Positions 36,536 to 37,655 of a stretch of 64,000 nucleotides of DNA are shown one piece after another. The stretch lies in NCBI RefSeq assembly GCF_011386835.1, contig NC_088794.1:4278001-4342000 (forward strand), read 5' to 3'. Both the position numbers and the translations under genes were made by a program. Numbering within the stretch: the stretch's first letter is position 1; the number at the start of each line of letters is the position of its first letter. Source of the DNA: Chrysemys picta bellii. Its lineage: Eukaryota. A model generated the notes under the pieces. The model saw only the letters and a program-made list of their open reading frames with translations. It did no database searches and was not told the DNA's origin.

Positions 36536-37655
36536 TCACCAAAAGGTCTCCGCCTCTTTCCCCTTGGCTGCGCTCTGCTGGGGTGGCTGGGAGACATAGT
36601 CCAAGCAGCTTCGACCCCCGAGGTGGGGCCCACAGCGCAGGCTGTACTGGAACCAGATGCGGCCATGTTTAAGGTAGCAATCCTTCTGGTGAGGTTCCCC
36701 AGCCTCCAGCGGGATGTCGCAGCTTCCCAGCTTTTCAACTGTCAACGGGTCTTTGTCCAAGACCTGGACATGGATCTTGCTGGTGCTGGTGAGGTGGACG
36801 GTACCGAAGTCCAACTGGACATTCCAGACGGGATTGTTGTTGTCCCGGATGGTGTTGGTCTGGCTCTCCCTTCTCTCAAATAAAACCTTGACAAAGGCAT
36901 CTGTAGCGCTAAAGTAATCCCCCCACAGGCCAGTGGCCTTCTTCACTGTCACCATCAGCTTCCCCAGGCCACGCTCCCGCGAGCAGCACATGGTGTTGGT
37001 CATGGCATCCCCGGGGCAGACGCAGGAGCAGGGGTCGTGGGCGCTGCGTTGAGTCCCCGGAGGGCAGCTTCGGGTGCAATTCCTCCACAGGGCCCTCTCA
37101 TGGATGTACTCACTGACTGCCTGCCTCAGCGCCTCCCGCTTGAGGTCATCCTGCTCCACCAGGATGTGGATGGGGTGCAGAGAATAGGACACCAGGCCAG
37201 GGCTGGCTTTGAGGCTCTCAATCCAGGCCGAGAAGACCTTGGCATCACTGCCGGAGAAGAGCACGTCAGTCGTGCTCTCTCCTCCCTCCACCTCCACGTG
37301 GCGCTCCTGATACGTCTCATGGAAGCTCCCCTGGACCTTCCCCTTCTTCTTCTCCTCCTCGCACTTGCTGTACCCACCTTTGACCGAGCCCATTCCAATA
37401 CTCACGCCCGCCTCCACGCTCAAGCAGTCCTTGATCTCGTCGTCAGTCAAGCTGCTCATTGCCGCTTCGCAGACCCGCACGGCCGTCACGTCCCGCGCCC
37501 GGCCCCCCAGCTGCAGCTGGGACATGTAGTGGGTGCCGTAGTTGCTGATTAGCTGTTGGTACTCCACCTTCGATTTGCTGTTGTACTGGTCCGGGAGGTT
37601 CTCCAGCGCCAGAGTGAAATGGCTGGTGAGCGGGGGCGTCTCGCTGACCCGGAAC
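36536..37655 (-). CDS. PRF1: Perforin-1-like copy E, last coding exon (C2 loop 3 strongly altered)
   Basis: YGTHYMSQLQLGG; C2 ...GDYFSATD...TIRDNNNP...VLDKDPLTVEKLG; ends ETFW-TGA; 1120 nt. Confidence 0.96.

What the first reader, a model, noticed from the sequence alone, without database searches (positions are those of the whole stretch)
36731..36850. Copy E has a rewritten Ca2+-binding loop 3 in an otherwise intact gene
Seen: E reads TTG GAC AAA GAC CCG TTG ACA GTT GAA AAG (LDKDPLTVEK) where D reads TGG GAC GAG GAC ACC TGG AAC GAT GAC CTG (WDEDTWNDDL). Eight of ten codons change amino acid, with no frameshift, in a gene that matches D at most codons elsewhere. Loop 2 also has W->R (TIRDNNN, 36845-36847). 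Two loop-3 aspartates and two tryptophans are lost, two lysines are gained, and splice sites and the ORF are intact. Inference: a perforin with low or no Ca2+ dependence that binds anionic lipid, or a non-binding regulatory subunit that co-assembles with other paralogs.
Basis: partly seen in the sequence, partly recalled or inferred. Interest (0 to 1): 0.8.

Follow-up and report, generated by a model that had tools for sequence, protein, structure and literature searches.

The report
Turtle perforin paralog with de-acidified membrane-docking loop
One intact gene in the painted turtle's tandem perforin array has a real, inherited change at the tip of its third calcium-binding loop, but it keeps the four aspartates known to be essential for calcium binding, so it is probably a perforin with altered membrane docking, not a calcium-independent one.

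Summary
Copy E (minus strand, CDS 36536-37655 and 38206-38759) reads LDKDPLTVEK at 36731-36760. Copy D reads WDEDTWNDDL and copies C and F read WDEDNKWDDDL. E is intact and identical to RefSeq XP_005294126.1 (Chrysemys picta bellii).

The loop was not rewritten from a D-like sequence.
- E belongs to an old "E-type" perforin lineage that sits directly upstream of the D-type gene in Natator, Mauremys, Malaclemys and Chrysemys.
- All E-type genes share K at mouse position 484 (codon AAA), a loop one codon shorter, and E or Q at 491. Their loop-3 charge is 0 to -2, against -5 in canonical copies.
- The loop tip differs in every lineage.
- An unannotated Malaclemys ortholog has the same 30 nt except TGG for TTG, so the loop predates that genus split.
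- E looks "otherwise like D" because its MACPF part appears homogenised with its neighbours.

The four essential aspartates (mouse D429, D435, D483, D485) are invariant in 121 of 121 relatives, E included. The C2 model fits mouse perforin C2 at 1.4 Å. The C2 core has dN/dS of 0.3-0.5.

"No Ca2+ dependence" is therefore unsupported. Altered Ca2+ threshold or lipid preference is plausible but untested. Relaxed constraint is not excluded.

The parts
38206..38759 (-). Copy E, first coding exon (signal peptide and N-terminal part of MACPF), from ATG at 38759-38757 to the last exon base 38206; donor GT at 38205-38204
   Evidence: Translation; splice context; spliced product equals XP_005294126.1
37656..38205 (-). 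Copy E intron (550 nt, GT...AG)
36536..37655 (-). Copy E, second coding exon (rest of MACPF, EGF-like, C2, C-terminal tail, stop at 36538-36536)
   Evidence: ORF; phmmer to mouse perforin 3NSJ E=8.7e-106; Pfam MACPF residues 157-368 and C2 residues 416-506
36605..36964 (-). C2 domain of copy E (P0001 residues about 416-535)
   Evidence: Pfam C2; AlphaFold2 model pLDDT 88.6, TM 0.85-0.93 and rmsd 1.4 Å to perforin C2 4Y1T
36899..36925 (-). Ca2+-binding region 1 (WGDYFSATD). Mouse W427, D429, Y430 and D435 are all kept.
   Evidence: Alignment to 3NSJ; D429 and D435 invariant in 121/121 relatives
36830..36847 (-). Ca2+-binding region 2 (RDNNNP). Mouse W453 is R and N454 is D.
   Evidence: R453 occurs in 15/121 and D454 in 11/121 relatives. 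Both are also present in the Malaclemys ortholog.
36731..36760 (-). Ca2+-binding region 3, LDKDPLTVEK. By mouse numbering: W482L, D483 kept, K at 484, D485 kept, Y486P, one residue shorter, W488L, D489T, D490V, D491E, L492K.
   Evidence: V at 490 is unique among 121 relatives, L at 482 occurs in 3/121 and L at 488 in 2/121.
36480..36950 (-). Tract in which E differs from copies C, D and F at 7-12 sites per 100 nt, against about 1 per 100 in the MACPF part. It covers the C2 domain and tail. This is the old E-type segment.
25238..25267 (-). Comparator: loop 3 of copy D (WDEDTWNDDL), a D-type paralog
   Evidence: D-type clade with Emys, Chelonoidis, Mauremys and sea turtles
51963..51995 (-). Comparator: canonical loop 3 of copy F (WDEDNKWDDDL), also found in copy C, a lizard and a pleurodire turtle

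Best explanation
Copy E is the painted-turtle member of an old, positionally conserved 'E-type' perforin-1 paralog lineage.

Shown:
- The gene is intact.
- Its C2 domain folds like perforin C2 in a model.
- It keeps the four core Ca2+-ligand aspartates and two of the four hydrophobic anchors.
- Its loop-3 tip has lost the peripheral acidic residues and gained lysines, as in every E-type ortholog. Net loop charge is 0 to -2 instead of -5.
- The tip sequence differs in each lineage.
- The present sequence already existed before Chrysemys and Malaclemys split. Only W482L is Chrysemys-specific.

Inferred from branch lengths and dS: the MACPF/EGF part of E has been homogenised with its neighbours by gene conversion, or an equivalent recombination, while the C2 'targeting head' kept its own lineage. 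That is why the loop looks like an isolated rewrite.

Inferred mechanism: E is still a Ca2+-dependent pore-former. It binds fewer peripheral Ca2+ ions, has a less acidic and less aromatic docking surface, and so has a shifted Ca2+ threshold and/or membrane-lipid preference compared with the canonical copies C and F.
For: - Identity and intactness.
- Core ligands: D429, D435, D483 and D485 are invariant in 121/121 relatives. E departs from columns that are at least 95% conserved only once, at W482L.
- Fold: pLDDT 88.6, rmsd 1.4 Å to 4Y1T.
- E-type lineage: loop-3 DNA of Natator, Platysternon and Mauremys shares codon AAA at 484 and the one-codon deletion. Natator and Platysternon also share GAA at 491, where Mauremys has CAA. 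The same loop occurs in four cheloniid genera.
- Tree: the C2+tail DNA tree gives an E-type clade with support 98/99. A Chrysemys-only clade is rejected, p-AU 0.012.
- Synteny: the E-type gene lies directly upstream of the D-type gene in Natator, Mauremys, Malaclemys and Chrysemys.
- Inheritance: Malaclemys L006:5-886 has the same 30 nt apart from TGG for TTG, an open frame, and a 3' flank 98.7% identical.
- Mosaic: the winE terminal branch is 0.015 in MACPF against 0.065 in C2 without loop 3. The other species' E-type genes have similar branches in both parts. E-F MACPF dS is 0.076, lower than E against other species' E-type (0.13-0.17).
- Constraint: the C2 core has dN/dS 0.28-0.50 against all comparators, no higher than other paralog pairs at 0.46-0.79. 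Since the Malaclemys split, E's dN of 0.019 equals that of neighbour D.
- Literature: the essential Asp residues, natural R at mouse W488 in human perforin, and W488R raising the Ca2+ EC50 about 4.6-fold (PMC10400287); five Ca2+ ions and four hydrophobic anchors (PMC8704153).
Against: - With loop 2 and loop 3 columns removed, the protein tree no longer recovers the E-type clade. The DNA tree without loop 3 recovers it only weakly (43/0; Chrysemys clade p-AU 0.068). Orthology therefore rests largely on the loop, on synteny and on a few shared sites.
- The MACPF partition is unresolved, and an E-type clade there is not rejected (p 0.30). Gene conversion is inferred from branch lengths and dS, not from a supported topology conflict.
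- Since the Malaclemys split, E shows 13 nonsynonymous and 5 synonymous differences (dN/dS 0.72). This cannot be distinguished from neutrality or from D (Fisher p 0.52).
- The Malaclemys ortholog is not among the called genes of that locus, and only its last 293 codons could be read.
- No E ortholog was found among annotated proteins of Emys or Terrapene.
- There are no expression or biochemical data.
- The functional statement is inference from residues.
Confidence: 0.55

Rival explanations
1. Relaxed constraint. E's C2 docking surface is decaying, and the gene only looks healthy because gene conversion from neighbours keeps refreshing its MACPF part. The altered loop has no adaptive meaning, and the protein binds membranes poorly or not at all.
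For: - Chrysemys-branch changes hit positions otherwise conserved in all paralogs: R to Q, P to L, R to H (twice), S to T, and W482L. The branch has six nonsynonymous against three synonymous changes.
- dN/dS is 0.72 against Malaclemys.
- The loop tip differs in every E-type lineage.
- E-type orthologs in Mauremys and Chelonoidis have also lost a cysteine pair, and Platysternon and Chelonoidis have W427R.
- The Malaclemys ortholog is not called as a gene.
- The neighbouring copy C lineage shows breakage.
Against: - The frame is open in Chrysemys, and in the readable 293 codons of Malaclemys.
- The four core Asp, K484 and the reduced charge are kept in all E-type genes across families.
- The cheloniid E-type loop is identical in four genera.
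- C2-core dN/dS is 0.3-0.5, no worse than other paralogs.
- On the E branch outside loop 3, counts are 8 nonsynonymous and 8 synonymous against a neutral expectation of about 3:1 (binomial 0.034).
- E makes only one departure from columns at least 95% conserved.
Confidence: 0.25
2. One reading: E is a perforin with little or no Ca2+ requirement that docks on anionic lipid through its new lysines.
For: - Loop-3 formal charge goes from -5 (C, F, D) to -1, with K484 and K492 next to the Ca2+ ligands, and R453 in loop 2.
- Canonical perforin is inactivated on negatively charged membranes (PMC8704153), so a charge-shifted paralog could behave differently.
Against: - D429, D435, D483 and D485 are all kept, D454 is gained and E491 is kept. 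This is the pattern of a Ca2+-binding C2 domain.
- D491 is dispensable according to the title of Voskoboinik 2005 (cited in PMC7691655).
- No test of lipid binding was possible.
Confidence: 0.08
3. One reading: E is a poorly binding regulatory subunit that co-assembles with other paralogs through its near-identical MACPF domain and modulates their pores.
For: E's MACPF part is 95-99% identical to F's at DNA level, with a protein-tree path of 0.056. The oligomerisation surfaces are therefore probably compatible. The membrane anchors W482 and W488 are lost in Chrysemys.
Against: - This is purely inferential. No hetero-oligomeric perforin is documented in the papers read.
- L at 488 is still hydrophobic, and human perforin works with R there (PMC10400287).
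- Malaclemys keeps W482.
Confidence: 0.08
4. Assembly or sequencing artefact, or a chimeric collapse of tandem copies.
For: Tandem arrays are prone to mis-assembly. An older RefSeq model (XP_008160993.2) combines E's C2 core with a canonical loop 3 and is not on record in the current genome.
Against: The same 30 nt, bar one base, occur at the syntenic place in an independent Malaclemys assembly. Intermediate forms occur in at least eight other turtle species. The change is in frame. The protein has been in RefSeq unchanged, as version .1, and is on the 156.6 Mb chromosome record.
Confidence: 0.01

Closest known systems
Mammalian perforin-1 (mouse PRF1; structures 3NSJ, 7PAG; C2 domain 4Y1S/4Y1T)
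   Same: Same architecture: signal peptide, MACPF, EGF-like, C2 and C-terminal tail. phmmer E=8.7e-106. The C2 model superimposes at 1.4 Å. W427, D429, Y430, D435, D483 and D485 are all present.
   Different: The loop-3 tip is one residue shorter. D489, D490, W482, Y486 and W488 are replaced by T, V, L, P and L. K is found at 484 and 492, and R/D at 453/454. Net loop-3 charge is -1. The gene sits in a multi-copy tandem array, not as a single gene.
Canonical turtle perforin-1 paralogs (window copies C and F; 'F-type')
   Same: Same array and same exon structure. The MACPF part is 95-99% identical in DNA to F.
   Different: C and F carry WDEDNKWDDDL, which is identical in a lizard and a pleurodire turtle. 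E's C2 and tail differ at about 13-15% of nucleotides.
E-type perforin-1-like genes of other turtles (Natator XP_074812846.1, Eretmochelys XP_077676230.1, Mauremys reevesii XP_039393213.1, Platysternon TFJ96168.1, Chelonoidis A0A8C0J3I7; unannotated Malaclemys L006:5-886)
   Same: Position directly upstream of the D-type gene, checked in Natator, Mauremys and Malaclemys. K484 (codon AAA where DNA was read), loop 3 one codon shorter, E or Q at 491, and reduced loop charge. Malaclemys has the same DKDPLTVEK.
   Different: The tip residues differ: KWKN, LWTQ, LWWY and PWRD against PLTV. All but Chrysemys keep W482. All but the two emydids keep W488. Mauremys and Chelonoidis lack a cysteine pair that E keeps.
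Human perforin (R at the position of mouse W488)
   Same: A natural, functional perforin in which one loop-3 hydrophobic anchor is replaced. W488R in mouse perforin lowers membrane affinity about six-fold and raises the Ca2+ EC50 about 4.6-fold (PMC10400287). This is the kind of quantitative shift proposed for E.
   Different: Human perforin keeps all the loop-3 aspartates. E has lost D489 and D490 and has additional lysines.
Tandem PRF1 amplification in turtles at the STX4-ZNF646 locus (Araujo-Voces and Quesada 2020, PMC7574235)
   Same: The array itself is already described, and Chrysemys picta is among the species annotated there.
   Different: A term search of that paper found no occurrence of 'calcium' or 'gene conversion' and no passage on C2-loop classes or domain-wise concerted evolution.

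Membership tests
Perforin-1 (PRF1-like, MACPF/CDC superfamily) | MACPF domain with the Y/W-G-T-H-F/Y...GG signature | tested here: met
   Pfam MACPF E=1.9e-43, residues 157-368. YGTHYMSQLQLGG is present. Aligns to mouse perforin over residues 159-519.
Perforin-1 (PRF1-like, MACPF/CDC superfamily) | Architecture: signal peptide, MACPF, EGF-like cysteine-rich module, C-terminal C2 domain | tested here: met
   Hydrophobic N-terminus MISVMSRFGAFIPLLLFLLFIFPGA. Cysteine-rich CTRSCPPGTQRSAHDPCSCVCPGD...CC segment. Pfam C2 E=8e-14. The signal peptide was judged by eye only.
Perforin-1 (PRF1-like, MACPF/CDC superfamily) | C2 fold of the perforin type | tested here: met
   AlphaFold2 C2 model pLDDT 88.6. 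Best PDB matches are 4Y1T, 3NSJ and 5UG7 (TM 0.84-0.93, rmsd 1.4-1.7 Å). This is a prediction, not a solved structure.
Perforin-1 (PRF1-like, MACPF/CDC superfamily) | Core Ca2+ ligands D429, D435, D483, D485 (mouse numbering) | tested here: met
   All four are present in E and invariant in 121/121 relatives.
Perforin-1 (PRF1-like, MACPF/CDC superfamily) | Peripheral loop-3 acidic residues D489, D490, D491 | tested here: not met
   E has T, V, E. D491 is reported as not critical (title of Voskoboinik 2005, cited in PMC7691655). D490 coordinates one Ca2+ in 3NSJ (PMC10400287).
Perforin-1 (PRF1-like, MACPF/CDC superfamily) | Four hydrophobic membrane anchors W427, Y430, Y486, W488 | tested here: inconclusive
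   W427 and Y430 are kept. P at 486, where most turtle perforins have K, N or T, so this anchor is not a turtle feature. L at 488 is hydrophobic but not aromatic.
Perforin-1 (PRF1-like, MACPF/CDC superfamily) | Ca2+-dependent membrane binding and pore formation; expression in cytotoxic lymphocytes | not testable with these tools
   No biochemical or expression data were accessible.
Turtle E-type perforin paralog lineage (defined here) | Gene lies immediately upstream of the D-type paralog | tested here: met
   Window order F, E, D on the minus strand. Same adjacency in Natator L002, Mauremys L001 and Malaclemys L006.
Turtle E-type perforin paralog lineage (defined here) | K (codon AAA) at mouse 484, loop 3 one codon shorter, E or Q at 491, loop-3 charge 0 to -2 | tested here: met
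   DNA; proteins.
Turtle E-type perforin paralog lineage (defined here) | Monophyly of the C2 domain independent of the loop columns | tested here: inconclusive
   Support is 98/92 (protein) and 98/99 (DNA) with the loops included. Without them the clade is not recovered (protein) or is weak at 43/0 (DNA).

The most novel reading that the evidence does not exclude
The turtle perforin array works as 'one warhead, several targeting heads'. Gene conversion keeps the pore-forming MACPF domains of neighbouring paralogs nearly identical. Selection keeps distinct C2 docking surfaces apart. There appear to be four classes:
- Canonical F-type.
- D-type, with Y430Q.
- A-type, with W427R and Y430P.
- E-type, with a charge-neutralised loop 3.

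On this reading, E-type perforins are a conserved class specialised for membranes or Ca2+ conditions that inactivate canonical perforin, for example anionic, PS-exposing or microbial membranes. The fast-changing loop tip would reflect diversifying selection on target recognition.
Probability: 0.2. Interest if true: 0.7.

Novelty: new variant of a known kind. Interest (0 to 1): 0.45.

Why it matters
Perforin's Ca2+- and lipid-dependent docking through its C2 domain decides which membranes it attacks, and how killer cells avoid self-harm. Mammals have one perforin gene, so natural variation in the docking surface is scarce.

Turtles offer a ready-made series of paralogs with near-identical pore-forming domains but different C2 loops. 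E is the most extreme intact one found here. Comparing E, D and F in binding and lysis assays would test directly what the peripheral Ca2+ sites (D489, D490) and the aromatic anchors contribute.

The domain-wise contrast within one exon is also a clean case for studying how tandem immune genes diversify. The MACPF part is homogenised while the C2 part keeps an old lineage.

If E turns out to be merely decaying, the interest is limited to that evolutionary pattern.

Tried and rejected
- **Donor for a templated replacement.** No other copy of the 21-mer exists in the window, allowing up to 3 mismatches. No 11- or 12-mer of the loop occurs elsewhere, and the four 10-mer hits are at chance level. 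The Malaclemys copy later made this moot.
- **Compensated frameshift or micro-inversion.** The in-frame alignment is the best one, and the reverse complement matches nothing (my own reading). Rejected.
- **Protein tree of C2 without loops 2 and 3.** The E-type clade was not recovered. This is kept as a caveat.
- **AU test on the MACPF partition.** Uninformative, p 0.30.
- **Look-ups that returned nothing.** XP_008160993.2 (P0075) and Natator P0002 had no record.
- **Emys orbicularis.** There is no perforin-like sequence within 12.4 kb upstream of the D ortholog. However, collinearity with both Chrysemys and Malaclemys ends about 4.4 kb upstream of it, so no conclusion is possible.
- **Malaclemys F-like gene (L007).** It lies 34 kb from L006, so the 5' half of the Malaclemys E ortholog could not be reached.
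- **Full-length AlphaFold2 model.** It was poor outside C2 (mean pLDDT 57) and was not used. The C2-only model was used instead.
- **Yagi et al. 2015 (PMC4646173).** Not held. Statements on Ca2+ sites rest on PMC10400287 and PMC8704153.
- **Pfam on two repeat-like ORFs and the copy A exon.** No hits.
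Full report
**What the window is.** The 64 kb window is a tandem array of perforin-1-like genes, all on the minus strand.
- A tblastn search with a full copy finds exon-2-like and exon-3-like pieces for six copies.
- A is partial: exon 2 only, at 1172-1699.
- B has exon 3 at 4677-5810 and exon 2 at 11276-11815.
- C lies at 17597-20570, D at 25043-27354, E at 36536-38861 and F at 51768-54188 (ORF bounds).
- The best database match to E is 100% identical and is named perforin-1-like of Chrysemys picta bellii.
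- Tandem amplification of PRF1 in turtles at the STX4-ZNF646 locus is already published (PMC7574235).

**The observation.** It is correct in every stated detail.
- window:36731-36760:- reads TTG GAC AAA GAC CCG TTG ACA GTT GAA AAG, which is LDKDPLTVEK.
- Copy D reads WDEDTWNDDL. Copies C and F read WDEDNKWDDDL.
- The loop-2 arginine codon is at 36845-36847.
- The splice donor and acceptor are canonical.
- The spliced 557-residue product equals XP_005294126.1 residue for residue.
- Alignment to mouse perforin 3NSJ (E=8.7e-106) identifies the segment as Ca2+-binding region 3.
- In mouse numbering (chain index + 20), E has W482L, D483, K484, D485, Y486P, one residue missing, W488L, D489T, D490V, D491E and L492K.
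- Loop 2 has W453R and N454D. Loop 1 keeps W427, D429, Y430 and D435.

**Is it more than chance?**
- Across exon 3, 12 of the 74 E-F differences fall in one 30-column window. This was matched by 1 of 20000 permutations.
- The whole C2 domain of E is also unusual. Sites where E alone differs from C, D and F number 5 in the 232 MACPF/EGF codons but 36 in the roughly 140 codons of C2 plus tail, and 15 of those 36 are synonymous.
- Measured against that raised background, the loop cluster is only moderately significant: 225 of 20000 for E-F and 3230 of 20000 for E-D.

**Relatives elsewhere.** A search with E's C2 region returned 52 perforin-1-like cluster representatives, and I listed members of 20 of those clusters.
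- A group of genes in other turtles carries an intermediate loop:
  - Natator, Eretmochelys, Lepidochelys and Caretta have WDKDKWKNEL.
  - Platysternon has WDKDLWTQEL.
  - Mauremys reevesii has WDKDLWWYQL.
  - Chelonoidis has WDKDPWRDEL.
- I fetched the DNA of three of them. All share codon AAA at 484, which is two changes from GAG. All share the one-codon deletion and GAA or CAA at 491.
- Formal charge of the loop-3 segment is -5 in C, D and F. It is 0 to -2 in every E-type gene and -1 in E (my count).
- The canonical WDEDNKWDDDL, in contrast, is identical in a lizard and in a pleurodire turtle.

**Orthology.**
- With the loops included, the C2 tree groups E with these genes. Support is 98/92 for protein and 98/99 for DNA, and a Chrysemys-only clade is rejected at p-AU 0.012.
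- Without loops 2 and 3 the protein tree loses the clade. The DNA tree without loop 3 keeps it only weakly (43/0; p 0.068).
- Synteny gives independent support. The gene directly downstream of the E-type gene is the D-type paralog in Natator (exact N-terminus of P0090), in Mauremys reevesii (P0091), in Malaclemys and in the window.

**The decisive comparison.** In Malaclemys terrapin, an emydid like Chrysemys, the 10 kb upstream of the D ortholog holds an unannotated open frame, L006:5-886.
- It encodes the last 293 residues of an E ortholog.
- Its loop-3 DNA is identical to the window's except TGG for TTG at the first codon. TIRDNNN is there too.
- The 3' flank is 98.7% identical over 387 nt.
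- So the loop is real and inherited, and it predates the split of the two genera. Only W482L is specific to Chrysemys.

**Why E looks like its neighbours elsewhere.**
- The terminal branch of E is 0.015 substitutions per site in the MACPF/EGF part of exon 3. It is 0.065 in C2 plus tail without loop 3, and 0.086 with it.
- The Natator, Mauremys and Platysternon E-type genes have similar branches in both parts.
- Synonymous divergence between E and F in the MACPF part (0.076) is lower than between E and the E-type genes of other species (0.13-0.17). Yet the E-type C2 lineage includes sea turtles.
- In the protein tree of the MACPF part, sequences group by species or family, not by paralog type (quick tree).
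- The simplest reading is gene conversion, or an equivalent recombination, that homogenises the pore-forming part among neighbours and stops near the start of C2, at about 36950.
- This is an inference. The MACPF partition has no supported topology.

**Is E under constraint?**
- For the C2 core without loop 3, dN/dS of E against all comparators is 0.28-0.50. That is no higher than other paralog pairs, at 0.46-0.79.
- On the E branch outside loop 3, there are 8 nonsynonymous and 8 synonymous changes, against a neutral expectation of about 3:1 (binomial 0.034).
- E departs from columns at least 95% conserved only once, at W482L.
- Loop 3 itself has dN/dS of 1.2-2.6. About 7 nonsynonymous changes occurred where 2 would be expected at the local synonymous rate (Poisson 0.0045). 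Adjacent multi-nucleotide changes could inflate this figure.
- Since the Malaclemys split the picture is weaker. There are 13 nonsynonymous and 5 synonymous differences, giving dN/dS 0.72. For D the figure is 0.32-0.39. The dN is the same for both (0.019), and Fisher's test gives p 0.52.
- Relaxed constraint in the recent past cannot be excluded.

**Function.**
- D429, D435, D483 and D485 are invariant in 121 of 121 related proteins, E included. [quoted passage not shown]
- D491 is reported as not critical (title of Voskoboinik 2005, cited in PMC7691655), and E has glutamate there.
- D490 coordinates one Ca2+ in the mouse crystal structure (PMC10400287). E has valine there, unique among the 121.
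- Human perforin naturally has arginine at mouse W488. W488R in mouse perforin raises the Ca2+ EC50 about 4.6-fold (PMC10400287).
- The C2 model of E is confident (pLDDT 88.6). It fits mouse perforin C2 at 1.4 Å and shows loop 3 as a short turn.
- I therefore think E most likely still needs Ca2+, has lost one or more peripheral Ca2+ sites, and docks with a less acidic and less aromatic surface. That would shift its Ca2+ threshold or lipid preference.
- Canonical perforin is inactivated on negatively charged membranes (PMC8704153), so a charge-shifted paralog could differ there. This last step is inference only.

**Comparison with what is known.**
- E passes every structural test for perforin-1 membership except the peripheral acidic residues of loop 3. 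The hydrophobic anchors are partly kept.
- The gene and the array are already annotated and published.
- In my four full-text searches I found no description of three things: the E-type class of C2 loops, its conserved position, or the contrast between a homogenised MACPF part and lineage-specific C2 domains.
- I rate it a new variant of a known kind, of moderate interest.

**Limits.**
- No reads, expression data or biochemistry were available.
- Only 293 codons of the Malaclemys ortholog could be read.
- The status of E in Emys is unknown.
- The N runs at 12677-12885 and 59096-59894 were left untouched.

Noticed in passing
L006:5-886 (+), Malaclemys terrapin CM051161.1: An open frame encoding the last 293 residues of an E ortholog, including WDKDPLTVEK and TIRDNNN. 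It is not among the called genes of that locus. It lies 9.1 kb upstream of the D ortholog's first exon.
   Followed up: yes
window 17597-20570 (-), copy C; L006 about 21400-22550: The exon-2 open frame of copy C has no in-frame signal-peptide Met, because its N-terminal region is replaced by unrelated sequence. Its intron is 1181 nt against 533-619 nt in D, E and F. The Malaclemys C ortholog changes reading frame within exon 3, near the residues SSLTDD. This lineage may be decaying. It is described only; no repair was attempted.
   Followed up: partly
Protein P0075 (XP_008160993.2, older Chrysemys RefSeq model; no locus on record): It carries E's C2 core, including the Chrysemys-only T and H residues, with Q at position 453. 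From loop 3 onwards it has the canonical WDEDKWDDDL and a D/F-like C-terminus. It could be a second locus, a recombinant allele or an old-assembly chimera.
   Followed up: partly
window 25043-27354 (-), copy D, and D-type proteins in other turtles: D-type paralogs form a conserved class of their own, with GDQSTATDAF (mouse Y430 to Q), NNNSPVWY and a loop 3 one codon shorter. They are found from Dermochelys to Emys. Copy D's tail, QLGT..., matches copies C and F, whereas the Terrapene D-type has QQST.... This suggests conversion of the tail in the Chrysemys/Malaclemys lineage.
   Followed up: partly
Proteins P0041, P0140-P0143 (Malaclemys, Mauremys, Chrysemys, Emys): A more distant conserved paralog class has GLRGDP (mouse W427 to R, Y430 to P) and WDKDKWRDDL. 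The partial copy A at window 1172-1699 might belong to it, but this was not tested.
   Followed up: no
Proteins P0017 (Mauremys reevesii), P0009 (Chelonoidis), P0072 (Platysternon): These E-type orthologs have lost C2 cysteines that are otherwise at least 95% conserved (P0001 positions 497 and 511). Both are lost in Mauremys and Chelonoidis, and 497 is lost in Platysternon. Chrysemys E keeps both.
   Followed up: no
window 1-1158; 3129-3454; 40121-40704; 56436-57087; 8916-9426; 10617-11201: There is a GC-rich 40-nt tandem array at the window start. Arrays of a 75-nt unit lie upstream of E and F and near copy A/B. Arrays of a 42-nt unit lie inside the 5.4 kb gap between the two exons of copy B.
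   Followed up: no
window 54825-55454 (-) and 48501-49055 (-): Two open frames between the perforin copies look transposon-derived. From memory only, the first resembles the C-terminal part of a CR1-type LINE ORF2. Neither gave a Pfam hit.
   Followed up: partly
L005:1-8000 (Emys orbicularis) against L006 and the window: Collinearity upstream of the D ortholog ends about 4.4 kb from it in Emys, compared with both Chrysemys and Malaclemys. Whether Emys has an E ortholog is therefore unknown.
   Followed up: partly
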